DNA of 64,000 nt from positions 1 through 64,000 of the forward strand of contig NIVC01002116.1 of the NCBI GenBank assembly GCA_002269645.1. The letters run 5' to 3'. Position numbers and translations under genes: made by a program. The first letter of the stretch is position 1, and each line of letters begins with the position of its first letter. The notes below the pieces were generated by a model, which was not told the DNA's origin, ran no database searches, and worked only from the letters and a program-made list of their open reading frames with translations. The stretch is from Macrostomum lignano (Eukaryota). This document shows positions 16,481 through 37,049 of this stretch, in pieces.

Positions 16481-18511
16481 TCAGGGCCGGCTGCTCCTGG
16501 CCAGGCTCTCCAGTGCGGTCACCAGGGCGGCCATGTCGTGCAGGCGGTCAAAGCTGAAGTATCGCTCCAGCAGGCGGCCGAAGAACTCCGGCGACCGAGC
16601 CATGGCGCCCAGCAGGAAGCGCAGCTCGCGCCCAGTCAGCCGCATGTCGGCCACCTGGTGCGGCAGGCCGCACTCCGAGCACCAGCGGGCCACGCGGGCG
16701 GTGTCCCAGGCTTCGAAGTTGTCGGAGACTGCGGCAGCGGGAATGGTGGCGGCGGCGGTGGTGGGTGCGGAGGGCGCAGCTGCGACTGTCCCACTTGCAG
16801 CGATGGGCGGCAGCGGCGGCACTGGCGTGGGCAGACGGTGCTGCTGGGGCGGGGGAGACTGCGCCTCCGCGGCATCCAGGCAGGATTGAATGGCCGGCAG
16901 CAGCTGGGAGAATTTCTCCTCAAACGGGTACTTGGACTCGGTGAGGTCAAAGTACAGCTGCGTGCCAAGCAGCATCCCCAGCCAGCCTGTGGCCTTGTAC
17001 TTCGGCTCCATCAGCACCGGGATCAGCTTCTTGCCGCACTTCCAGGCGTATTCCGCCTCTGGAAAACAGACAAGCGAGAGCGGCTTGATTTGCTGGACAC
17101 TACTAGCAGGAGTGCTTTAAAGATTTTAGCTAACTTTTCCTATTTACACAGAAGCGTGGCCCAATTTAGTGAAAAGATGAGTAGACAGGGGCTGGCTGAT
17201 TGACATCAGAGACGGAGTGAATCACAAAGAGTTGACCCGGAAGCGAGTGAACCACAATGAGTTGACCCGGAAGCGAGTGAACCACAATGAGTTCACCCGG
17301 AAACGAGTGAACCACAATGAGTTCACCCGGAAGCGAGTGAATCACAATGAGTTCACCCGGAAACGAGTGAACCACAATGAGTTCACCCGGAAGCGAGTGA
17401 ATCACAATGAGTTCACCCGGAAACGAGTGAATCACAATGAGTTCACCCGGAAGCGAGTGAATCACAATGAGTTCACCCGGTAGGGAGTGAACCACAATGA
17501 GTTCACCCGGAAACGAGTGAACCACAATGAGTTCACCCGGAAACGAGTGAACCACAATGAGTTCACCCGGAAGCGAGTGAATCACAATGAGTTCACCCGG
17601 AAACGAGTGAACCACAATGAGTTCACCCGGAAACGAGTGAACCACAATGAGTTCACCCGGAAGCGAGTGAATCACAATGAGTTCACCCGGAAACGAGTGA
17701 ATCACAATGAGTTCATCAGGAAGGGAGTGAATCACAATGAGTTCACCCGGTAGGGAGTGAATCACAAAGAGTTGACCCGGAAGGGAGTGAATCACAAAGA
17801 GTTGACCCGGAAGGGAGTGAATCACAATGAGTTCACCCGGAAGGGAGTGAATCACAAAGAGTTGACCCGGAAGGGAGTGAATCACAATGAGTTCACCCGG
17901 AAGGGAGTGAATCACAAAGAGTTGACCCGGAAGGGAGAGTGAATCACAAAGAGTTGACCCGGTAGGGAGTGAATCACAATGAGTTCACCCGGAAGGGAGT
18001 GAATCACAAAGAGTTCACCCGGAAGGGAGTGAATCACAATGAGTTCACCCGGAAGGGAGTGAATCACAATGAGTTCACCCGGAAGGGAGTGAATCACAAT
18101 GGAAAAGCACTACAGCCCAGTGAACTATTGACAAAAGCACACAGACAGGTTGGCGGCACCCACCCAGCCTGCAGTTGTTACTCTCTTTGTACAGCCGGGT
18201 CACGCACAGCAGCACAACCAGAGAGCTCTCGACCGCTGCAGACATGGCATCCAGAGTGGAGCCCTCCTTCAGGTGTTTGAAATCTACCCAGACGTCTAAG
18301 TGACTCTCACACAGGCGGCCGTGCAGCCTCTCCACCTGCTGTTTGCTGGCGTGATTGTAGCTGATCATGACCCGACGGTACCGCCGCGCCGGCTCGCGGC
18401 CTCGCCGCCGGATCGCTGGCCGCCCAGGAGGCGGAAGGCCAGGCCGTTCAGCTGTCGGGAGCTGCTCCACCGCTCCACTGACTGAAGGCGCTCGATGTGC
18501 CCCCTGTGAAG

Positions 18512-18546
<35 letters not shown>

Positions 18547-18656
18547 TAGATAGCGAGAAAGAGCGAGCGAAGCGAGCTCTTTCGAGCTTGCTTGCCGCAG
18601 CCAATCAAGCTGAAAGCACGCACACAAGATCACCGGAAACGATTAAGGCAGCTGGA

Positions 18657-18690
<34 letters not shown>

Positions 18691-20856
18691 TCTTTCACCT
18701 GAACTCCGTCTTGATGCGCTCGGCCGCTCGCTGGCTGAAGCTCAGCGTGAACAGAATCTCCAGGCCCTCCTGTACGTCCTGAGCCTCCGGGCTGTCCAGC
18801 ATCAGCTTGACTACAGACAGCACGTTCAGCTCTACCAGCAGGTCTTTGTTCGCGTCGTTTAAGGCCAGCCGGTTGATGCCTTGAGTGAATGAGACAGTTT
18901 TGCTTGACCTGGGTGCTCGTATTCTTCCGGTATCTGCAGTTCCATCTGCCATCGACTTCACTCTACCCTTTTAAACTATTCTCTTAATTCCGTGAGACCT
19001 TTTCACTTCAACTCTCGATTCTATTCTACCCTGATGCTGTTCTGAGCTGTCCAGCGATTCACACGCATGAGAGCCAACCCTAAGCACACAGAGTGTACGT
19101 GCCTGACGATTAGAAAGTCTTGGCCCGCTGTACACCCAGTGTGAAGTGTATGGAAGACCATATCACCGAAGGCCTATTATTATAGTACTCAACACGCCAG
19201 CGTCCCAAGCACCCCCAGCTCACACTTGGACATCTCCGCCACCGAGTAGCCGTCGCAGGCCCGCTCCGGAGCCTTCAGTCCCAGCCGCAGGATGCTGATC
19301 AGGTAGTTGATGCTTTTCTTGGCGCCCAGAAAGATCTCAGCCTGACTGTCGCCAACCGCGAAAGCGATAAATATCAAAGCGGTAGCCTGCGGGCGCGCGG
19401 TTTTGGGGTTCAGTGCGCCTGATCGGTACTACTCGCAGTAGGAAGGGAGAGGGGAGGGAGGAAGGGAGAGGGGAGGAAGGAAGGGAGAGGGGAGGGAGAA
19501 AGGGAGAGGGGAGGAAGGGAGGGGGAGGGAGGAAGGGAGAGGGGAGGAAGGGAGAGGGGAGGAAGGGAGAGGGGAGGAAGGAAGGGAGAGGGGAGGTAGG
19601 AAGGGAGAGGGGAGGAAGGAAGGGAGAGAGGAGTGAGGAAGGGAGGGGGGAGGAAGGAAGGGAGAGGGGAGGGAGGAAGGGAGAGGGGAGGAAGGAAGGG
19701 AGAGGGGAGGGAGGAAGGGAGAGGGGAGGAAGGAAGGGAGAGGGGAGGGAGGAAGGGAGAGGGGAGGAAGGGAGAGGGGAGGAAGGAAGGGAGAGGGGAG
19801 GTAGGAAGGGAGAGGGGAGGAAGGAAGGGAGAGAGGAGTGAGGAAGGGAGTGGGAGGAAGGAAGGGAGAGGGAGGGAGGAAGGGAGAGGGGAGGAAGGGA
19901 GGGGAGGGAGGAAGGGAGAGGGGAGGAAGGGAGAGGGGAGGAAGGGAGAGGGGAGGAAGGAAGGGAGAGGGGAGGTAGGAAGGGAGAGGGGAGGAAGGAA
20001 GGGAGAGGGAGTGAGGAAGGGAGGGGGGAGGGAGGAAGGGAGGGGGGAGGGAGGAAGGGAGAGGGAAGGAAGGGAGGAAGGAAGGGAGAGGGGAGGAAGG
20101 AGATATGGAGGGCAAATGAAGGAAAGGTTAGGAATAAACCGACAGCAAGTGAGAGGAATGAAAATGAAAGAGAATGAACACAAAGAGCAACTAAAAGGTC
20201 TGAGCGGTGCTCACCGACACCCTGGTGACAGGGCTGACCAGGTAGGGCTTGGCGCTATCCACCATGCCGGGGAACTCAGCCAGCCTTCGGTACAGCTCCG
20301 AGTCATTCTTAAAGTACATGTTGTAGCCGATTCCGAGAGCGCACTCGACCAGGGAGGCCGTGTTCAGCTCCAGCATCTGGCCTCCGTCCTGCGCGTTGAG
20401 CAGGTCGGGAAAATATGAGCGAAAGAATTTGTCCTGGCTTTTGGCGAATTGCAGGCAAAACTCCAGCGACCTGTCTGTGCAGTTGAGCAGGCAGAGCAGG
20501 ACTCGAACTGCCAGATCGTCGTAAGCGCCTCTCAAGCGGAGCAGCGTCAGCAGCAGGTCCACCAGGCTGGTCACCAGGCCGGAGTCCAGCATCTCCTGCT
20601 CGACAGTCCGCAAGTCGGCCTTCAGCTCCGGCTTCCACTTGGTGCCGTGCGAGCTCATCATCCAGTTGAGCTGGCTGAAACTGCGCGACAGTCGGCCAGC
20701 GGCGCCAGCATCCGCAGCGCCATCAGGCGCCGCAACGAAGGCAGCCAGGTCGGAGCCGATCTCCGACAGGCACCGGCGGCAGGCCTCCAGCGAGAAGTCC
20801 GGCTCGCTATGGGCTGCGGCCGCAGCCTTGGAGACGGACTTGGAGCGGCGCTGCAT
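16481..20856 (-). CDS. ARM-repeat / TIR (TIR_2-type) / C-terminal SAM-like domain protein (SARM1-like domain set in a different order)
   Basis: Exons 20856..20215, 19386..19224, 18879..18699, 18503 (or 18477)..18164 and 17058..16481. The N-terminus is helical and ARM-like. The TIR signature is VMISYNH...VWVD...GSTLDAMSAAVESS.VVLLC...YKESNNCRL|EAEYA...LIPV. The C-terminal WDTARVARWC..CGL...LTGRELRFL is SAM-like. The strong exon-4 acceptor gives a stop just before the TIR domain (see findings). Confidence 0.8.
17216..18100. repeat. 30-bp minisatellite in TIR-gene intron 4
   Basis: About 29 copies of gtgaaccacaatgagttcacccggaaacga and variants. Confidence 0.96.
18512..18690. repeat. Two short (TAGA)n tracts at both ends of TIR-gene intron 3
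   Basis: 18512-18550 and 18657-18690, each adjacent to a splice site. Confidence 0.9.
19440..20100. repeat. Polypurine G/A repeat (gggagaggggaggaa-type) in TIR-gene intron 1
   Basis: About 660 bp of almost pure purine on the + strand. Confidence 0.95.
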
Positions 20857-21289
20857 GACAGTCAGTTTGGCTGAGCTCACTGCTCTCTGCGCATGGAGTG
20901 CCAAGAGTGCGGCTCCGGAGCCAAAGTAGCAGCTCACCTGTTCAGCTTGCCGCTCTCTCGCCCAGCAGCTTAGAGCAGTGCTCACAGGGGCAGGGGTGTA
21001 CGCACAGGCTCTGCGTACACTGTGAGCAGTCCAGTGCTATCTATCACCTATTTGTTTCTGAAAGGAATTCTTTTCAGTGTACACTGCAGTTTAGAAGCAG
21101 CCCTATACTCGCATGCTATCCACGCCGTACAATCGCTTCGTTGTCATGACTACGAGCGTACCTGCATGGCTTGAAAAGCAGGCAATGTACAATCCGAGGA
21201 TAGACTTAGGAGTAGGTCGTGAGACTCTACTTATAGTAGGCCAGTATGGCGTACAGTACACGTCGTCAATCTAGTATTGCGTCCTCAAA

Positions 21290-22510
21290 GTGGACACTTC
21301 TCAAAGCAGACACTTCTCAAAGCGGACACTTCTCCAAAGCAACCACTTGTCAAAGCAGACAATTATCAAAGCAGACAATTGTCAAAGCAGACAATTATCA
21401 AAGCAGACACTTCTCAAAGCGGACACTTCTCAAAGCGGACGCTTCTCAAAGCGGACACTTCTCTAAAGCAGACAATTGTCAAAGCAGACACTTCTCAAAG
21501 CAACCACTTCCCAAAGCAGACAATTGTCAAAGCAGACACTTCTCAAAGCAGACACTTCTCAAAGCAGACACTTCCCAAAGCAGACAATTGTCAAAGCAGA
21601 TACTTCTCAAAGCGGACACTTCTCCAAAGCAACCACTTGTCAAAGCAGACAATTGTCAAAGCAGACAATTGTCAAAGCAGACAATTATCAAAGCGGACGC
21701 TTCTCAAAGCAACCACTTCCCAAAGCAGACAATTGTCAAAGCAGACACTTCTCAAAGCAGACACTTCTCAAAGCAGACACTTCTCAAAGCAAGCACTTCC
21801 CAAAGCAGACAATTGTCAAAGCAGACACTTCTCAAAGCAGACACTTCTCAAAGCAAGCACTTCCCAAAGCAGACAATTGTCAAAGCAGACACTTCTCAAA
21901 GCAGACACTTCTCAAAGCAGACACTTCCCAAAGCAGACAATTGTCAAAGCAGATACTTCTCAAAGCGGACACTTCTCCAAAGCAACCACTTGTCAAAGCA
22001 GACAATTGTCAAAGCAGACAATTGTCAAAGCAGACAATTATCAAAGCAGACAATTGTCAAAGCAGACAATTGTCAAAGCAGACAATTATCAAAGCAGACA
22101 ATTGTCAAAGCAGACAATTATCAAAGCAACCACTTCCCAAAGCAGACAATTGTCAAAGCAGACACTTCTCAAAGCGGACACTTCTCAAAGCGGACGCTTC
22201 TCAAAGCGGACACTTCTCTAAAGCAGACAATTGTCAAAGCAGACAATTGTCAAAGCAGACACTTCTCAAAGCAACCACTTCCCAAAGCAGACAATTGTCA
22301 AAGCAGACACTTCTCAAAGCAACCACTTCCCAAAGCAGACAATTGTCAAAGCAGACACTTATCAAAGCGGACACTTCTCCAAAGCAACCACTTCCCAAAG
22401 CAGACAATTGTCAAAGCAGACACTTCTCAAAGCGGACACTTCTCCAAAGCAACCACTTCCCAAAGCAGACAATTGTCAAAGCAGACACTAAACAAAGCAG
22501 ACACTTGTCA
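21290..22510. repeat. 16-bp minisatellite with variants (aaagcagacacttctc / aaagcagacaattgtc)
   Basis: Directly visible. Confidence 0.95.
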
Positions 22511-23204
22511 AAGATCTAAAGGTTCACACCAGCAAATGAATTGCGGCTGGGACTTATACAAGTACAAGAAAAAATGACTAAAGCTGAAGCAGAGCTCACC
22601 ATTGACATTTTTTGCATTCATAATTTATGAGCAAAGTCTTTACTCGTCTCTACACGACGAGATAACTGAGAGTTCTCGCAGATATATTCTCGACTACAAT
22701 ACATTTAGCAAGCAATGCACAAGAGAATAACCATTATCACTAGGCAGCAAAAACGCAAATTATTTTCTCTAGGTCCTAGTAGAGTTGCCCAGTTACATCG
22801 TTCTTTCAAATAATAATCAATCGAAATTTCCAAGGCAAGCAGACGTGAAACTCTGGATCTACTTGGCTAAAAATCTATGGATGATAAACCGACATGCAGG
22901 ATTTAATAGCGACTAGAATTAAATCCCAGATCAGGCTCTGACGGAGGCAGGACTAAATTAGTAATTCATAAATTTAAAAGCATTTGGCAGGACGCTCGTA
23001 TCTTCGGTTTTCCTAGGGTTCAGTTTAAAAATGTGGATCTGAACTTTGGGCTGGGCCAGAATAGCAAATATTAGGTAAAATACGAGTGCAGCGCAGACGC
23101 ACCTGTACATGTTGAATTGCAGCTCATGTGCAAGTTGCATTGTACCCGCACTGATTCTATTTCCACATAGAAACATCACAGATCGGAAAAAAGCGTGCAA
23201 CTGA

Positions 23205-24074: not shown

Positions 24075-26767
24075 TCAGCCGCCGTACCGGTTCAGCATAT
24101 CGCAGTGCGGAGTAGTCAGCTTGGACGCGATAGCATAAGCTTCTTTGTTGTGGTAATATTTTGCCCGGAATTGCATGGACTCCTCTGGAAGCAGAAATGA
24201 CACAAACGATAGTTGTCTAGTCGGTAGCTAGCTAGCTTTGCAATAATCATCAACAAAAAGGCAGAACAAAGGCTAAGAGGACTCACTGTAGCTGCGCTCC
24301 CTGTAGCACTTGACTCGCAATGTGTGAAAAAAGTCGTCTTCGATCTCGGCCTCCAGTTGGCCCAGATTGCCAGTGAATTCCGAGCGAAAATTCGGCTTCA
24401 CATAGTAAGGCACCTTGCTGTGCCGAGTGTGCCGCACGTCCGAGTAGGCGCTGCGGGATTGACAGGTGCGAGCTCAAGAGTTAAATCCCTGCTCATGCTT
24501 ACACTAAGGGATCTGGGGCAGGGAAGCCTGAAGGATCGGAGGGAGGGCAGCCTGAAGGATCGGGGGAAGGCAACCTGAAGGATCGGGGGTAGGCAACCTG
24601 AAGGATCGGGGGTAGGCAACCTGAAGGATCGGGGGAGGCCGGGAGGGCAACCGGAAGGATCAGGGGAGGACACCCTGAAGGATCGGGAAAGGGCACCCTG
24701 AAGGATCAGGGGGAGGACACCCTGAAGGATTGGGGGAGGACACCCTGAAGGATCAGGGGGAGGACACCCTGAAGGATCAGGGGAGGATACCCTGAAGGAT
24801 CAGGGGGAGGACGCCCTGAAGGATCGGGGGAGGACACCCTGAAGGATCAGGGGAGGACACCCTGAAGGATCAGGTGGAGGACGCCCTGAAGGATCAGGGG
24901 GAGGACGCCCTGAAGGATCAGGGGGAGGACACCCTAAAGGATCAGGGGAGGACACCCTGAAGGATCAGGGGGAGGACGCCCTGAAGGATCAGGGGGAGGA
25001 CACCCTGAAGGATCAGGGGAGGACACCCTGAAGGATCAGGGGAGGACGCCCTGAAGGATCGGGGGGAAGGCAACCTGAAAGCAGCAAAGCAGAAGACTTA
25101 CTTGTTAGCGGACAGGCTGTACCAGGGGTCGCGGTGCATGAGGCCGGACAGCACGGACATGAGCATGAGCAGGAAGATGGGTGCAAACTGCAGCAGCATT
25201 GAATAAACATTGCGACCGGCCGCTTCGCCAGCCTGGCCGCCGTCGTGCCGTTGATGCCGCCGGGCCCGCCGCTGCCGCATCTCGTAGGTCGGAAAGCCGC
25301 CGCCGAAGAACATGTTGAAAATTTCTTCTGGCGACACGTCGGCCTCGAATCCGCGCGAATAATCGTCGTAATAGTAGCCTCTGCCGTTGCTATGACGACG
25401 CGTTGCCTGCTGCTCCTCTTCTGAGCCGTACATATCGTAGCGCTGCCGCTTGGCGGGGTCGGCCAGGACGCTATAGGCGTTTCCAATTGCCTTAAATGCT
25501 TCCTGGGCGCCGGGCGCCTTATTCTTATCCGGGTGAAACTTCAGCGCCAGCTTTCGATACGATCGCTTCAGATCGTCATCTGTGGCGTCCTTGGCAACGC
25601 CCAGGATCTCGTAGTAGTCTTTGGCCTGGCAGGGCATGCAGGAAACATTATTCAGTACATAGTAAATTAGGGAGTACGTTTGTACTCTACAACTACCGCA
25701 AGTTCTCGAGCACATTTGTCAAGCATGGGAGACACTTCTCAAGCATGGCAGACATTTCTCAAGCATGACAGACATTTCTCCAGCATGACAGACATTTCTC
25801 AAGCATGGCAGACATTTCTCAAGCATGACAGACATTTCTCCAGCATGACAGACATTTCTCAAGCATGACAGACATTTCCCAAGCATGACAAACATTCCTC
25901 AATTATGGGAGACATTTCTCAAGCACGAGAGACATTTCTCAAGCATGACAGACATTTCTCAAGCATGACAGACATTTCTCAAGCATGACAGACATTTCTC
26001 AAGCAACACATACATTTTTTAATTATGGAAGACATTTCTCAAGTATGGGAGACATTTCTCAATTATGGGAGACATTTCTCAAGCACGAGAGACATTTCTC
26101 AAGCACGAGAGACATTTCTCAAGCATGACAGACATTTCTCAAGCAACACATACATTTTTCAATTATGGAAGACATTTCTCAAGCATGACAGACATTTCTC
26201 AAGCAACACATACATTTTTCAATTATGGAAGACATTTCTCAAGCATGACAGACATTTCTCAAGCAACACATACATTTTTCAATTATGGAAGACATTTCTC
26301 AAGCATGACAGACATTTCTCAAGCATGACAGACATTTCTCAAGCATGACAGACATTTCCTTAAGCATGACAGACATTTCCCAAGCATCGCAGACATTTCT
26401 CCAGGCCCGGAGGCTCTGCTCAATAAATGTCTCAAATCACCTTGCGGATCCGCGCCACCCCGCTGGCCTGCTCCTCAGTAAACTGCCGCTCAGGATGGCC
26501 GCTGCCGCTGCTGGTCCGGCGCCTTCGGGCACCTCCATCGTCGTCCTGCGCATTCGACTGTCGCCCTCCCTGTCCACCGTGCGAGCCGCTGTTGCTAAGC
26601 AACTGTTCCAACAGACGCTTGGCCTCCGGACAGCCGTCGACAGCGTCTAAACGGCAGGCTTTGCGCAGCAGCCGCTCTGCTTTTTCCGCGTCACCAGAAG
26701 CCAGCGCGGTCTTGGCGATGCCCAGACAGCGAAGGCTCTCCTCCCGGTTGGCGCTGGTGTCGGCCAT
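24075..26767 (-). CDS. DNAJB12: DnaJ homolog subfamily B member 12/14 (ER membrane J-protein, ~374 aa)
   Basis: Exons 26767..26441, 25625..25102, 24450..24287 and 24184..24075, phase-consistent (1125 nt). It has an N-terminal helical region ([12 protein letters not shown]), a J-domain (DYYEILGV...[14 protein letters not shown]), a G/F-rich region, a TM segment ([16 protein letters not shown]) and a DUF1977-like C-terminus (VPYYVK...CYRER). Confidence 0.95.
24525..25078. repeat. 23-24-bp minisatellite in DnaJ intron 2
   Basis: cctgaaggatcagggggaggacac and variants. Confidence 0.95.
25720..26400. repeat. 20-bp minisatellite in DnaJ intron 1
   Basis: gacagacatttctcaagcat and variants. Confidence 0.95.
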
Positions 26768-27934: not shown

Positions 27935-30900
27935 TCAATGGTGCAACTTGGCCGCTGCGCCCTTGGAATAGGCGAATGGCAATGGCGGATCGGCCGGCAG
28001 GTCGGACGGCAGCTGGTCGAGCACCAGCCGGCCAAGCAGGCCCTGGTTGAAGTGGCGCAGCAGGGCCTGCGCTCCGGCTACCAGGTTGGGCCCGTGCACC
28101 AGCTGGCCGGTGTGAAAGTTGCGGTGCGCCTGCACCAGGCGGTGCTTCCGGCAGATGCCTGGGGGTTTGGGATTGATGACTCTGTCTATATTGGAGGCCG
28201 GAACTGCAGCTGCGAACTGGAAATCTCACTACTTGAATCTCACCACAATCCGTTAAAATTAATATTAACCTGACTGGGAATCTCACCTATGCAGATAGCA
28301 ATCAGTATGGAAATCTCACCTATGCAGATAGCAATCAGTATGGAAATCTCACCTATGCAGATAGCAATCAGTATGGAAATCTCACCTATGCAGATAGCAA
28401 TCAGTATGGAAATCTCACCTATGCAGATAGCAATCAGTATGGAAATCTCACCTATGCAGATAGCAATCAGTATGGAAATCTCACCTATGCAGATAGCAAT
28501 CAGTATGGAAATCTCACCTATGCAGATAGCAATCAGTATGGAAATCTCACCTATGCAGATAGCAATCAGTATGGAAATCTCACCTATGCAGATAGCAATC
28601 AGTATGGAAATCTCACCTATGCAGATGGCAATCAGTATGGAAATCTCACCTATGCAGATAGCAATCAGTATGAAAATCTCACCTATGCAGATAGCAATCA
28701 GTATGGAAATCTCACCTATGCAGATAGCAATCAGTATGGAAATCTCACCTATGCAGATAGCAATCAGTATGGAAATCTCACCTATGCAGATAGCAATCAG
28801 TATGGAAATCTCACCTATGCAGATAGCAATCAGTATGGAAATCTCACCTATGCAGATGGCAATCAGTATGGAAATCTCACCTATGCAGATAGCAATCAGT
28901 ATGGAAATCTCACCTATGCAGATAGCAATCAGTATGGAAATCTCACCTATGCAGATAGCAATCAGTATGGAAATCTCACCTATGCAGATAGCAATCAGTA
29001 TGGAAATCTCACCTATGCAGATAGCAATCAGTATGGAAATCTCACCTATGCAGATAGCAATCAGTATGGAAATCTCACCTATGCAGATAGCAATCAGTAT
29101 GGAAATCTCACCTATGCAGATAGCAATCAGTATGGAAATCTCACCTATGCAGATAGCAAACAGTATGGAAATCTCACCTATGCAGATAGCAATCAGTATG
29201 GAAATCTCACCTATGCAGATAGCAATCAGTATGGAAATCTCACCTATGCAGATAGCAATCAGTATGGAAATCTCACCTATGCAGATAGCAATCAGTATGG
29301 AAATCTCACCTATGCAGATAGCAATCAGTATGGAAATCTCACCTATGCAGATAGCAATCAGTATGGAAATCTCACCTATGCAGATATCAATCAGTATGGA
29401 AATCTCACCTATGCAGATAGCAATCAGTATGGAAATCTCACCTATGCAGATAGCAAACAGTATGGAAATCTCACCTATGCAGATAGCAATCAGTATGGAA
29501 ATCTCACCTATGCAGATAGCAATCAGTATGGAAATCTCACCTATGCAGATAGCAATCAGTATGGAAATCTCACCTATGCAGATAGCAATCAGTATGGAAA
29601 TCTCACCTATGCAGATAGCAATCAGTATGGAAATCTCACCTATGCAGATAGCAATCAGTATGGAAATCTCACCTATGCAGATAGCAATCAGTATGGAAAT
29701 CTCATCTATGCAGATAGCAATCAGTATGGAAATCTCACCTATGCAGATATCTCTCACCCTGCGATCAAAGCAATTAAATAAGCGCCAACCAACCTGCCAG
29801 CAGGTCCCGCACATCGGTGACCGGGCCCTCCAGATCGTACAGCTTAACATAGCTTCTCTCGCCTCGAACGTTGAGCAGGTGCAACAGGTAGTCGGCGATA
29901 ACCTGCGAGTCGATCTGGTTGAGATCCATGCAGCCGCAGGCGCCCAATTTCAGCATGTTGCCAATGTCGTCTTTGAACTCGGGATCAAGGATGCCTGGCG
30001 AGTCCAGTACGTATACAGGGGGGTCCTGGCACACCTGCGTTATTAAAAATTGTTAGATATTTTGTACTAATTAGGCTAATGCAGAAGGATGCTTTCAATT
30101 CGAGACTGGATATTGAGACTTACAATGCCGACTTTCACTGTATTATCTATATTAAGGGTGAGATTCCAATCCTACATACCATCCCAAGTGTGAGACTCCC
30201 ATCCTACATACCCTCCCAAGTGTGAGACTCCCATCCTACATACCCTCCCAAGTGTGAGACTCCCATCCTACATACCCTCCCAAGTGTGAGACTCCAATCC
30301 TACATACCCTCCCAAGTGTGAGACTCCCATCCTACATACCCTCCCAAGTGTGAGACTCCCATCCTACATACCCTCCCAAGTGTGAGACTCCCATCCTACA
30401 TACCCTCCCAAGTGTGAGACTCCCATCCTACATACCCTCCCAAGCATACATGCGCAACCTCCAAATTTCGGTCGGCCATGCGACTTAGTTTTAACAAAAA
30501 TGCGACGTAGTTTTTGGCCAAAAATGCGACTTACATGTAAAAAAACCCGAAAGCAAAATTAACGCAACTTTGGGTAAACGGCAGGAGTAACTATGACTGT
30601 CTTATAAAGCCAAAATGCCTCGTCAGCTACTTAGTACTACTACTCTGTGTTTTTTCGGGTTGGCATTTTTGCGACTTCCTTGGTTGGCCGCCAAATCGGT
30701 CGGCCGGATCGGCCGACTGTTGCGCATGTATGCTCCCAAGTGTGAGACTCCAATCCTACATACCCTCCCAAGTGTGAGACTCCCATCCTACATACCCTCC
30801 CAAGTGTGAGACTCCCATCCTACATACCCTCCCAAGTGTGAGACTCCAATCCTACATACCCTCCCAAGTGTGAGACTCCCATCCTACATACCCTCCCAAG

Positions 30901-36320: not shown

Positions 36321-37049
36321 ATGGCGCGCAAGCATGTCGACGTATCTGATCCACAAAAGACTGCGCTGTCAGTAAAGAGAAATCGGGGTGGTGGATCAAG
36401 CTGCTACGAAACATCGCATTGCAAGAGAGATTCGGAGCCGATATCTTATGCTCAGAGAAAAATCACAGATGAAAGTATTGATCTCGACTCTGCCTCTACT
36501 CCACTTCAATTAGTGACAGTGAAGCCGAAACTCGAACCACAAATTTCCGTTTTGTCCACTGACAGCGGATTTCTGCCCAGAGATATCCAGGACTCCTCAT
36601 TTGTAGAAGACGTGATGGAGGAACTAAACAGCCAAGGCATCAGTCATTCTGATATTATTTGCTGTCATGGTTGCCATGCAGGCACTCAAGAAAGACCACT
36701 TAAGCTTCCTGGCCTTGCAGTATCAAACGGAACACCAGAAACAGCCTGCCAAAAGAAGTCGAGAGAAGCGTGCCAGCGGGATCTCGACGGTCCTTCCTGC
36801 AAGAAGGTGTTCACGCAGAAAGCTTTGGAAGGTCAGGCTGAAGTGAAAAACGAAAAGCGCATTAAGAACAACGCAGCTTCGAGAAAGTCCAGAGCAAGTC
36901 GGAAGATGAATACTTTGGTAAAGGAGCAGGAAATTGCAGCTCTTCAAGCAGACAATCAAAGGTTGGCGATCGTTCTCGAAGACTTCACTTCTATAGCCGC
37001 AGCCTGCAAGCAGTGGATTGTGCGAAACATGGAAACTCCAGACACTTAA
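36321..37049 (+). CDS. Intronless bZIP transcription factor (PAR/C-EBP-like basic region)
   Basis: 242-aa ORF with the C-terminal basic region KRIKNNAASRKSRASRK followed by a leucine-zipper-like heptad. An AATAAA lies at about 37559. Confidence 0.85.
   Translation: MARKHVDVSDPQKTALSVKRNRGGGSSCYETSHCKRDSEPISYAQRKITDESIDLDSASTPLQLVTVKPKLEPQISVLSTDSGFLPRDIQDSSFVEDVMEELNSQGISHSDIICCHGCHAGTQERPLKLPGLAVSNGTPETACQKKSREACQRDLDGPSCKKVFTQKALEGQAEVKNEKRIKNNAASRKSRASRKMNTLVKEQEIAALQADNQRLAIVLEDFTSIAAACKQWIVRNMETPDT

What the first reader, a model, noticed from the sequence alone, without database searches (positions are those of the whole stretch)
16481..20856. SARM1-like parts in permuted order (ARM-TIR-SAM) with the putative catalytic glutamate intact
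SARM1 is ARM-SAM-SAM-TIR, where ARM autoinhibits, SAM oligomerises and TIR cleaves NAD+ through a conserved Glu. Here the same kinds of module appear as ARM-TIR-SAM. The TIR keeps NCRLEAEYA, with Glu at the position of the WCxxE catalytic residue, its codon split by intron 4. It is a candidate intracellular sensor-NADase for invertebrate immunity or cell death.
Basis: partly seen in the sequence, partly recalled or inferred. Interest (0 to 1): 0.75.

Follow-up and report, generated by a model that had tools for sequence, protein, structure and literature searches.

The report
Flatworm ARM-TIR-SAM-like gene, known family
This is a real five-exon flatworm (Macrostomum lignano) gene for an armadillo-repeat, TIR and SAM-like protein that keeps the catalytic-type glutamate, but it is one member of a large, already catalogued and still uncharacterised animal family, not a rearranged SARM1, and this copy has a one-base frame break in exon 4.

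Summary
On the minus strand, 20856-16481, five GT-AG exons encode an ARM solenoid, a full-length TIR_2 domain (E 6e-20) and a C-terminal five-helix SAM-like domain. The Glu of NCRLEAEYA has its codon split G|AG by intron 4 and sits in the catalytic-Glu column of SARM1/TIR-1, RPS4 and Cat1.

Two corrections:
- **Frame break.** With the homology-supported exon 4 acceptor, the ARM frame reaches a stop just before the TIR. A one-base indel lies in 18425-18368. It may be an assembly error or a real lesion.
- **Not SARM1, not new.** The TIR is 27% identical to human SARM1 TIR but 44-48% identical to a large ARM-TIR cluster. There is one terminal SAM-like domain, not a central tandem pair. The family has 1,624 representatives at E<=1e-30, spanning molluscs, annelids, brachiopods, nemerteans, hemichordates, amphioxus and echinoderms, and most keep the C-terminal domain.

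A 2026 preprint already lists a paralog with Glu at the active-site position. It found four isolated TIRs of this cluster inactive in E. coli.

Most likely function (inferred): an ARM-regulated TIR NAD+-processing enzyme that depends on oligomerisation. A non-catalytic adaptor role is a serious rival.

Verdict: new member of a known kind, moderate-to-low interest.

The parts
20215..20856 (-). Exon 1 (ATG at 20856-20854), 214 codons. Encodes the N-terminal disordered tail and the first ARM-type helical repeats.
   Evidence: ORF and GTGAGC donor. 99% identical to the homeologous copy L001, with 8 of 9 differences across exons 1-3 synonymous. Helices 23-207 in the AF2 model.
19224..19386 (-). Exon 2, ARM repeats (ATALIFIAFAVGD...AEMSK).
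   Evidence: CAG acceptor and GTGAGC donor, phase 0 to phase 1. Aligned with the paralogs.
18699..18879 (-). Exon 3, the ARM repeat carrying the invariant N-D-x-N-K motif (INRLALNDANKDLLVEL...).
   Evidence: N276, D277, N279 and K280 are invariant in the family alignment. This region gives the best match to the Vac8 ARM repeats.
18164..18503 (-). Exon 4: last ARM helix (GHIERLQSVERWSSSRQLNGLAFRLL), a short linker, then the first two thirds of the TIR (VMISYNH...SNNCRL plus the G of the Glu codon).
   Evidence: The first-AG acceptor at 18503 gives the sequence homologous to the paralogs. In paralog P0007 the equivalent exon is one uninterrupted frame. Pfam TIR_2.
18368..18425 (-). Zone holding a one-base frame disruption between the ARM-end frame and the TIR frame. 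The ARM frame stops at TGA 18367-18365. Adding one C after GAGGCC (18398) restores a 634-aa protein. An alternative acceptor at 18477 restores a 625-aa ORF but loses the conserved helix.
   Evidence: UniProt model P0003 of this gene reads GGEAREPARRYRRVMISYNH across the junction.
16862..17058 (-). Exon 5, first part: the AG of the split Glu codon (17058-17057) and the rest of the TIR (EAEYAWKCGKKLIPVLMEPKYKATGWLG...).
   Evidence: The same G|AG split occurs in the paralog gene L002.
16718..16861 (-). Exon 5, middle: a Pro/Ala-rich disordered linker between the TIR and the C-terminal domain.
   Evidence: pLDDT below 50 for residues 509-554. Not conserved in sequence or length across the family.
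16481..16717 (-). Exon 5, end: the C-terminal five-helix SAM-like domain (FEAWDTARVARWCSECGLP...ALESLARS), a short tail and the TGA stop (16483-16481).
   Evidence: The best match of about 108 of the best 150 family representatives runs to the C-terminal end of the family profile, and so includes this domain.
17059..18163 (-). Intron 4 (phase 1, inside the Glu codon), mostly a 30-bp tandem repeat.
   Evidence: Tandem Repeats Finder: 17215-18101, 29.5 copies, 93% matches.

Best explanation
Shown: the region is a real five-exon gene of the flatworm Macrostomum lignano. It encodes a protein of about 630 residues with no secretory or membrane segment. The protein has about seven armadillo-type repeats, a TIR_2-type TIR domain, a disordered linker and a single C-terminal SAM-like five-helix domain. 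It belongs to a large, ancient and so far uncharacterised family with this same architecture.

Inferred mechanism: the TIR is an NAD+-processing enzyme, either an NADase or a cADPR-type cyclase, that uses the invariant Glu. Its active site forms only when TIR domains are brought together. The C-terminal SAM-like domain supplies the self-association, probably as an open head-to-tail polymer like the DGK-delta, Shank and TEL SAM domains it most resembles. The ARM solenoid acts as the sensor or brake that holds the TIR off until a ligand or partner protein binds.

On this view it works like SARM1 in logic (sensor, oligomeriser, TIR enzyme), but it is an independent lineage, not a SARM1 ortholog.

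In this window the copy carries a one-base frame break in exon 4. This is more likely an assembly indel than a dead gene, but that is unresolved.
For: Gene and organism:
- The exon model has canonical splice sites.
- 99-100% protein matches to M. lignano entries.
- 8 of 9 exon differences from the homeologous copy are synonymous, while the introns diverge by 2-12% with gaps.

Domains:
- TIR_2, E 6e-20.
- ARM by family profile (Vac8 1e-16) and by fold.
- SAM-like by profile and by fold.

Family:
- 1,624 representatives at E<=1e-30, most matching from the ARM region to the C-terminal end of the profile.
- Members occur in molluscs, brachiopod, annelid, nemertean, hemichordate, amphioxus and crinoids.

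Catalytic potential:
- The residues S.NCR.E..YA around the Glu (S437, N439, C440, R441, E443, Y446, A447) are invariant in 11 of 11 aligned members from flatworm, annelid and bivalves.
- The Glu aligns with the catalytic Glu of TIR-1/SARM1, RPS4 and Cat1.
- The preprint's structure-based pipeline gives paralog P0008 Glu423, the same column, at a C-alpha distance of 0.5 A from the reference active-site residue.
- Related animal TIRs, about 30% identical, are active. The Latimeria TIR, which also has N-C-x-x-E, depletes NAD+. The oyster and herring TIRs make cADPR.

Oligomeriser idea: the best structural matches of the C-terminal domain are self-associating SAM domains: DGK-delta, Shank2, SARM1 SAM1-2, CNK/HYP, PHC3 and Scm.
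Against: No activity was measured for any full-length family member.

Four isolated TIR domains of the same cluster have an empty 'Active' column in Table S4 of preprint 10.64898/2026.04.20.719644. They come from Chlamydomonas, Branchiostoma, gar and Phallusia, and are 44-48% identical to this TIR.

The Trp four residues before the Glu, present in SARM1, plant and many bacterial TIR enzymes, is an invariant Asn here.

Support for the SAM assignment is statistically weak: Foldseek E is 0.7 or higher, and the window protein has no Pfam SAM hit even at E<=10.

The roles proposed for ARM (sensor or brake) and for SAM (polymer) rest on analogy only.

The frame break in exon 4 could mean this particular copy makes no full-length protein.
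Confidence: 0.5

Rival explanations
1. Non-catalytic adaptor or scaffold. The TIR serves only for TIR-TIR contacts in Toll/IL-1-type signalling, and the ARM and SAM-like domains are further protein-protein interaction modules. This is the role usually proposed for invertebrate 'evolutionarily conserved TIR-domain-containing' and 'ARM-TIR' proteins.
For: Four isolated TIRs of this cluster were inactive in the E. coli assay. Immunome surveys treat such proteins as possible adaptors or regulators (PMC6321704; PMC9334734; PMC6836662). ARM and SAM are classical interaction modules. The Trp four residues before the Glu is absent.
Against: The Glu and its neighbouring residues are invariant across the 11 aligned flatworm, annelid and bivalve members. 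The preprint also records Glu at the active-site position for the cluster members seen in its Table S2, including the green algae Gonium and Chlamydomonas. This is hard to explain for a pure scaffold. The assay that gave the negatives also missed the known enzymes RUN1 and RPP1. It used TIR domains stripped of the SAM-like oligomeriser.
Confidence: 0.3
2. This particular copy is a decaying duplicate (pseudogene). The one-base frame break in exon 4 is real, so the locus yields only an ARM-only product or nothing, whatever the family does elsewhere.
For: With the acceptor that homology supports, the reading frame hits TGA at 18367-18365 before the TIR. The paralog P0007 has an uninterrupted exon 4. 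M. lignano carries many near-identical duplicated copies. The sister copy L001 shows only exons 1-3 within the 14 kb held downstream of exon 3.
Against: All other exons are intact with canonical splice sites. The break is a single base in a very GC-rich run (GGCGGCGAGGCCGCGAGCCGGCGCGGCGG), where long-read assemblies often drop bases. The exons differ from L001 almost only at synonymous sites. A UniProt model of this gene from another assembly reads straight through the junction (P0003). An in-frame alternative acceptor exists at 18477.
Confidence: 0.17
3. It is the flatworm SARM1 ortholog, with its domain order changed by rearrangement or by misassembly of the window.
For: The three kinds of domain are the same. 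Full-length human SARM1 and C. elegans TIR-1 structures appear among the Foldseek hits (E 2.6e-6 and 4.8e-6).
Against: The order ARM-TIR-SAM-like is reproduced in independent genomes of at least eight phyla and in paralog genes with the same intron in the Glu codon. The TIR is 27% identical to the human SARM1 TIR, against 44-48% to the ARM-TIR cluster. There is one SAM-like domain, not two. Global TM to SARM1 is only 0.2-0.3. The preprint places SARM1 in a different TIR cluster (T1J6E6_2) from paralog P0008 (A0A0B7AZE4_1).
Confidence: 0.03

Closest known systems
Animal ARM-TIR proteins: TIR cluster A0A0B7AZE4_1 in bioRxiv 10.64898/2026.04.20.719644, and the 'ARM-TIR' class of the Aplysia immunome survey (PMC9334734)
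   Same: An N-terminal ARM (Pfam TPR-clan) solenoid is followed by a TIR_2-type TIR with Glu at the active-site position. Paralog P0008 (A0A1I8H3D3) and Lingula A0A1S3HGA3 (P0038) are listed in the cluster. The window TIR is 44-48% identical to four cluster members.
   Different: Nothing essential differs: this gene is a member. The published tables annotate only the ARM/TPR-clan part and the TIR. The conserved C-terminal SAM-like domain is marked in a single Bugula fragment and is not discussed. This copy has a frame break in exon 4.
SARM1 / C. elegans TIR-1 / Drosophila dSarm
   Same: The same three kinds of module (ARM, SAM, TIR). A bacterial-type (TIR_2-like) TIR with the Glu in the column of E642. 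Intracellular. The likely logic of sensor, oligomeriser and TIR enzyme.
   Different: The domain order is ARM-TIR-SAM, not ARM-SAM-SAM-TIR. There is one divergent SAM-like domain, joined by a roughly 45-residue disordered linker, instead of a tandem pair that forms an octameric ring. TIR identity is only 27%. Asn replaces Trp four residues before the Glu. No evidence was found for the NMN/NAD+ pocket in the ARM domain. Isolated TIRs of the family were inactive in an assay where the SARM1 TIR was active.
Active animal TIR_2-type TIRs from the same preprint (Latimeria H2ZXV5, Clupea A0A6P8EVF3, Magallana gigas A0A8W8J0Z4)
   Same: About 30% identity to the window TIR. They share the MISY...VW.D...AM..(A/G)(V/I).....S..C..E..YA...IP...WL(G/A) framework. 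The Latimeria TIR has the same N-C-x-x-E motif and depletes NAD+.
   Different: They belong to different TIR clusters and have different or no accessory domains. They were active as isolated domains.
Polymer-forming SAM domains (TEL/ETV6, DGK-delta, Shank, PHC3, Scm)
   Same: A five-helix bundle of about 70 residues. These are the best sequence-profile and fold matches to the C-terminal domain.
   Different: Similarity is weak: single-domain E-values are 0.03-0.2 by profile and 0.7 or higher by Foldseek. Polymer-interface residues were not assessed and self-association is untested.

Membership tests
SARM1 family | Domain order: N-terminal ARM, then tandem SAM1-SAM2, then C-terminal TIR | tested here: not met
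   The order here is ARM (residues 23-355), TIR (373-508), linker, then a single SAM-like domain (557-631). The same order is conserved across the family.
SARM1 family | TIR domain orthologous to the SARM1 TIR | tested here: not met
   27% identity and E 2.5e-4 to the human SARM1 TIR, against 44-48% and E 1e-31 to 1e-37 to ARM-TIR cluster members. The preprint puts SARM1 and paralog P0008 in different clusters.
SARM1 family | Catalytic Glu (E642 in human) present | tested here: met
   The Glu of NCRLEAEYA aligns with the Glu of VHKE in TIR-1/SARM1. The equivalent Glu423 of paralog P0008 lies 0.5 A from the reference active-site C-alpha in the preprint's Table S2.
SARM1 family | Allosteric NMN/NAD+ pocket in the ARM domain, and NADase activity | not testable with these tools
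   No residue-level superposition on the SARM1 ARM domain was available. Activity needs an assay.
ARM-TIR family (TIR cluster A0A0B7AZE4_1) | ARM-type solenoid immediately N-terminal to the TIR | tested here: met
   Profile hits to Vac8, designed ARM proteins, importin-alpha and APC. Foldseek matches to designed-ARM and APC-ARM structures, target TM up to 0.66. Pfam Arm or ARM_ARMC5 in family members.
ARM-TIR family (TIR cluster A0A0B7AZE4_1) | TIR sequence groups with cluster members | tested here: met
   44-48% identity to four listed members. The full-length profile built on this protein retrieves listed members: P0008 (= A0A1I8H3D3) at 1e-205 and Lingula A0A1S3HGA3 at 6e-151.
ARM-TIR family (TIR cluster A0A0B7AZE4_1) | Glu at the TIR active-site position | tested here: met
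   E443 is invariant in 11 of 11 aligned members. Every cluster row seen in Table S2 records GLU.
Pfam TIR_2 (PF13676) | Score above the gathering threshold over the full model | tested here: met
   72.3 bits against a cut-off of 28, profile positions 1-122 of 122.
SAM domain superfamily | Significant match to a SAM sequence model | tested here: not met
   The window's C-terminal domain has no Pfam hit at E<=10. Only 2-3 of 9 family members hit SAM_1, SAM_2 or SAM_3, at E 0.02-0.1. The family profile against single SAM/PNT domains in the PDB gives E 0.03-0.3.
SAM domain superfamily | Five-helix SAM fold | tested here: inconclusive
   The model is confident (pLDDT 89.9) and has five helices. 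16 of 22 Foldseek hits are SAM domains with TM 0.5-0.69, but every E-value is 0.7 or higher. The result is coherent in direction but not significant on its own.

The most novel reading that the evidence does not exclude
The ARM-TIR-SAM-like family may be a second lineage of oligomerisation-gated TIR enzymes in animals, independent of SARM1 and spread across Bilateria. Its members would cleave or cyclise NAD+ only when the previously overlooked C-terminal SAM-like domain polymerises them. That would explain why isolated TIRs tested negative. It would also give invertebrates, and some fish, a SARM1-style sensor-executioner for immunity or cell death.
Probability: 0.3. Interest if true: 0.7.

Novelty: new member of a known kind. 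Interest (0 to 1): 0.35.

Why it matters
TIR domains with a catalytic Glu are now known to act as enzymes in bacteria and plants, in SARM1, and, according to a 2026 preprint, in many animal immune proteins. This family is one of the largest Glu-bearing animal TIR groups, yet no function is known for it and its isolated TIRs were silent in the only screen so far.

The useful point from this locus is not the gene itself. It is that nearly all full-length members carry a conserved C-terminal SAM-like domain that published domain tables omit. Any activity test should therefore include that domain.

For genome annotation, the result gives a corrected gene model. It also flags a one-base frame problem in this copy.

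Tried and rejected
1. Single-sequence searches. Pfam at E<=1 found only the TIR, and phmmer against the PDB found nothing. ARM and SAM needed family profiles and structure models.
2. An intact 625-aa ORF through an alternative exon 4 acceptor at 18477. I rejected it as the main model. It replaces the conserved last ARM helix (W....L.GL.F.L in the paralogs) with a Pro/Arg-rich read-through. It remains possible as a rescue isoform.
3. A mini-intron to repair the frame. The only GT...AG pair is 21 nt long and would delete the conserved VMIS strand, so I rejected it.
4. Using the homeologous contig L001 to settle the frameshift. That copy shows only exons 1-3 in the 26 kb held, so it gave no answer.
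5. A second word-indexed homolog search with the alignment added little. The exhaustive representative search was the informative one.
6. Gerdol et al. 2017, the ecTIR-DC classification, is not held in the library. I could not check whether this architecture has an ecTIR-DC number.
7. A full-text search for 'ARM-TIR-SAM' or 'TIR-SAM' as an architecture found nothing relevant.
8. The Chlamydomonas TIR that makes 3'cADPR in the preprint (E264) is a different protein from the cluster member tested (E531) and gives no support here.
9. The neighbouring ORFs (DnaJ, bZIP, repeat-derived ORFs) show no immune gene cluster.


Full report
**1. What is at the coordinates**

The window is eukaryotic, with GC-rich exons (GC3 0.82) separated by repeat-filled introns. 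On the minus strand, three-frame translation and splice-site inspection give five exons with GT-AG borders: 20856-20215, 19386-19224, 18879-18699, 18503-18164 and 17058-16481. ATG lies at 20856 and TGA at 16483-16481.

**2.

With the first AG acceptor of exon 4 (18503), the exon begins GHIERLQSVERWSSSRQLNGLAFRLLGG. This stretch is homologous to the last helical segment before the TIR in the paralogs, for example EVIGLLEVSPKWSSSKQLQGLVFQLQD in P0007.

That frame runs into TGA at 18367-18365. The TIR (RRVMISYNH...) is in another frame. One base is therefore missing somewhere in 18425-18368, inside a very GC-rich run.

- Adding one C after GAGGCC gives a 634-aa protein. Its junction is identical to that of UniProt model P0003 of the same gene.
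- An alternative acceptor at 18477 also restores a 625-aa ORF, but it destroys the conserved helix.
- In the paralog gene for P0007 (locus L002), exon 4 is one uninterrupted frame. The same G|AG split of the Glu codon is present there.
- Intron 3 sits eight codons further 3' in that paralog.

I could not decide between an assembly indel and a real lesion. The sister copy L001 (92-98% identical in the flanks) holds only exons 1-3 in the 26 kb available. Across those exons the two copies differ at 9 codons, 8 of them synonymously. This argues for constraint on the coding sequence.

**3. Domains**

- **TIR.** Pfam finds a full-length TIR_2: 72.3 bits, E 6e-20, profile positions 1-122 of 122.
- **ARM.** Nothing else passes for the single sequence. 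A family alignment (A1) searched as a profile against PDB sequences hits armadillo-repeat proteins strongly: Vac8 at 1e-16, designed ARM proteins at 1e-11, then importin-alpha, APC and plakophilin. Pfam Arm or ARM_ARMC5 hits 5 and 3 of 11 members.
- **Whole-protein model.** The AlphaFold2 model (pLDDT 78.7, pTM 0.70) shows a helical solenoid at 23-355, an alpha/beta TIR at 373-508, a disordered stretch at 509-554 and a five-helix bundle at 562-631. Foldseek matches the solenoid to designed-ARM and APC-ARM structures, with target TM up to 0.66. Full-length SARM1 and TIR-1 also appear, but with global TM of only 0.2-0.3.
- **C-terminal domain.** Modelled alone it is confident (pLDDT 89.9). Of 22 Foldseek hits, 16 are SAM domains: liprin-beta, DGK-delta, SARM1 SAM1-2, STIM EF-SAM, Shank2, CNK/HYP, PHC3 and Scm. 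TM is 0.5-0.69, but all E-values are 0.7 or higher. The sequence profile of this domain hits only SAM/PNT domains in the PDB. Single-domain TEL SAM scores 0.03-0.2. The 1e-7 values belong to triple-TEL fusion constructs and are inflated. Pfam gives sub-threshold SAM_1, SAM_2 and SAM_3 hits in a few members and none for the window protein.

I call the C-terminal domain SAM-like. The evidence points one way but is statistically weak.

**4. The glutamate**

In the family alignment the residues S.NCR.E..YA around the Glu (S437, N439, C440, R441, E443, Y446, A447) are invariant in all 11 members.

The TIR profile aligns the Glu with the catalytic Glu of three proteins: Cat1 (WCWDE), RPS4 (WCVRE) and C. 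elegans TIR-1 fused to SARM1 (VHKE). A multiple alignment with the human SARM1 TIR puts it opposite E642.

There is independent support. Table S2 of preprint 10.64898/2026.04.20.719644 lists paralog P0008 (A0A1I8H3D3) with GLU 423 at the active-site position, at an aligned C-alpha distance of 0.5 A. Residue 423 is the same column.

The motif is N-C-x-x-E, not W-C-x-x-E. The Trp four residues before the Glu in SARM1, plant TIRs and Cat1 is an invariant Asn here. That does not exclude activity: the Latimeria TIR in the same preprint has N-C-K-K-E and depletes NAD+.

**5. Relatives**

The closest proteins are from Macrostomum lignano. They include fragmentary models of this same gene and full-length paralogs at 34-42% identity. 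Next come Owenia and bivalves.

An exhaustive profile search finds 1,624 cluster representatives at E<=1e-30. Of the best 150 (all at E<=1e-96), about 108 match in one stretch that runs to the C-terminal end of the profile, and so include the SAM-like domain. Twenty were looked up. They come from bivalves, gastropods, Lingula, Owenia, the nemertean Lineus, the hemichordate Ptychodera, Branchiostoma, two crinoids and further M. lignano paralogs. One had no source name. All the named ones are called 'uncharacterized' or 'TIR domain-containing protein'.

In the preprint's Table S2 the TIR cluster represented by A0A0B7AZE4_1 contains P0008 and the Lingula protein. It also contains members from Bugula, Clytia, sea urchin and starfish, and the green alga Gonium. 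Table S4 assigns TIRs from Chlamydomonas, Branchiostoma, gar and the tunicate Phallusia to the same cluster. The accessory domain is annotated as TPR clan, the Pfam clan to which Arm belongs by my own knowledge. The Aplysia immunome survey counts 11 'ARM-TIR' genes of unknown function.

The architecture is therefore old, widespread and already catalogued. The C-terminal domain is marked in only one Bugula fragment of that table. No paper in the library uses 'ARM-TIR-SAM'. Gerdol et al. 2017, which classifies such proteins, could not be read.

**6. Relation to SARM1**

The kinds of module are the same, but membership fails on three counts:
- The order is ARM-TIR-SAM.
- There is one SAM-like domain, not two.
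- The TIR is 27% identical to the human SARM1 TIR (E 2.5e-4), against 44-48% to ARM-TIR cluster members.

The preprint places SARM1 in another cluster, T1J6E6_2. The conserved order across phyla excludes a local rearrangement or a misassembly.

**7. Function**

*Shown.* A cytosolic-looking ARM-TIR-SAM-like protein with an invariant Glu at the catalytic position.

*Inferred.* An NAD+-processing TIR enzyme whose activity needs self-association supplied by the SAM-like domain and is held in check by the ARM domain. This is the same logic as in SARM1.

*For.* The Glu and its neighbouring residues are strictly conserved. Active relatives exist at about 30% identity. The self-associating SAM domains are the best structural matches.

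*Against.* Table S4 of the preprint shows an empty 'Active' column for four isolated TIRs of this very cluster: #149 Chlamydomonas, #150 Branchiostoma, #151 gar and #152 Phallusia. The same assay left RUN1, RPS4 and RPP1 blank, and it used TIRs without their oligomerising partner. The negatives are therefore informative but not decisive.

*Main rival.* A non-catalytic adaptor, as usually assumed for such invertebrate TIR proteins.

**8. Verdict**

The gene is a new member of a known, uncharacterised family, and this copy has a frame problem. The one modestly new point is that the C-terminal SAM-like domain is a near-universal and under-annotated part of the family. Activity tests should include it.

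Noticed in passing
window 17215-18101 (intron 4): A 30-bp tandem repeat (GAGTGAATCACAATGAGTTCACCCGGAAGC), 29.5 copies at 93% matches, fills most of the intron that splits the Glu codon.
   Followed up: partly
window 19440-20100 (intron 1) and 16317-16460 (just 3' of the stop codon): Long purine-rich arrays on the plus strand: GGGAGGAAGGGAGAG-type units over about 650 bp, and (AAGGAGAG)n. They create long spurious ORFs in several frames.
   Followed up: partly
window 21284-22513 (upstream of the gene): A 16-bp tandem repeat (CTCAAAGCAGACACTT), 76 copies. It starts about 430 bp upstream of the ATG and gives a false 443-aa ORF with no Pfam hit.
   Followed up: partly
window 18504-18698 (intron 3): The intron is bounded on both sides by (GATA)n runs. 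In paralog P0007 the corresponding intron lies eight codons further 3', so the intron position differs between paralogs, whereas intron 4 is at the identical position.
   Followed up: partly
L001 (NIVC01002743.1) 10040-15054: A homeologous copy, 99% identical in exons 1-3. It lacks exons 4-5 in the 14 kb held downstream of exon 3. A 146-bp piece of intron 3 occurs twice there (12945 and 14909), which suggests an insertion or duplication that truncates that copy.
   Followed up: partly
window 25098-25715 (-), 36321-37049 (+), 12532-14064 (+), 28289-30046 (+): Neighbouring ORFs: a DnaJ domain (E 2e-26), which is the DnaJ/DUF1977 gene fused to this gene in some UniProt models; a bZIP_2 ORF (E 1e-8); and repeat-rich ORFs with CSL zinc-ribbon-like and Mucin-like hits. 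There is no other TIR or immune gene in the window.
   Followed up: partly
Preprint 10.64898/2026.04.20.719644, Tables S2 and S4: The same TIR cluster includes green-algal proteins: Gonium pectorale A0A150H4E2 (with an N-terminal TPR-clan region) and Chlamydomonas A0A2K3E7X5, whose TIR is 48% identical to the flatworm TIR. This is either a very old origin or horizontal transfer between algae and animals.
   Followed up: no
UniProt models P0005, P0006, P0011: Several database models of this gene are chimeras with the neighbouring DnaJ gene or with an Ig-like gene. Others (P0003, P0004) contain frameshifted or intron-derived stretches. Public protein entries for this locus are unreliable.
   Followed up: partly
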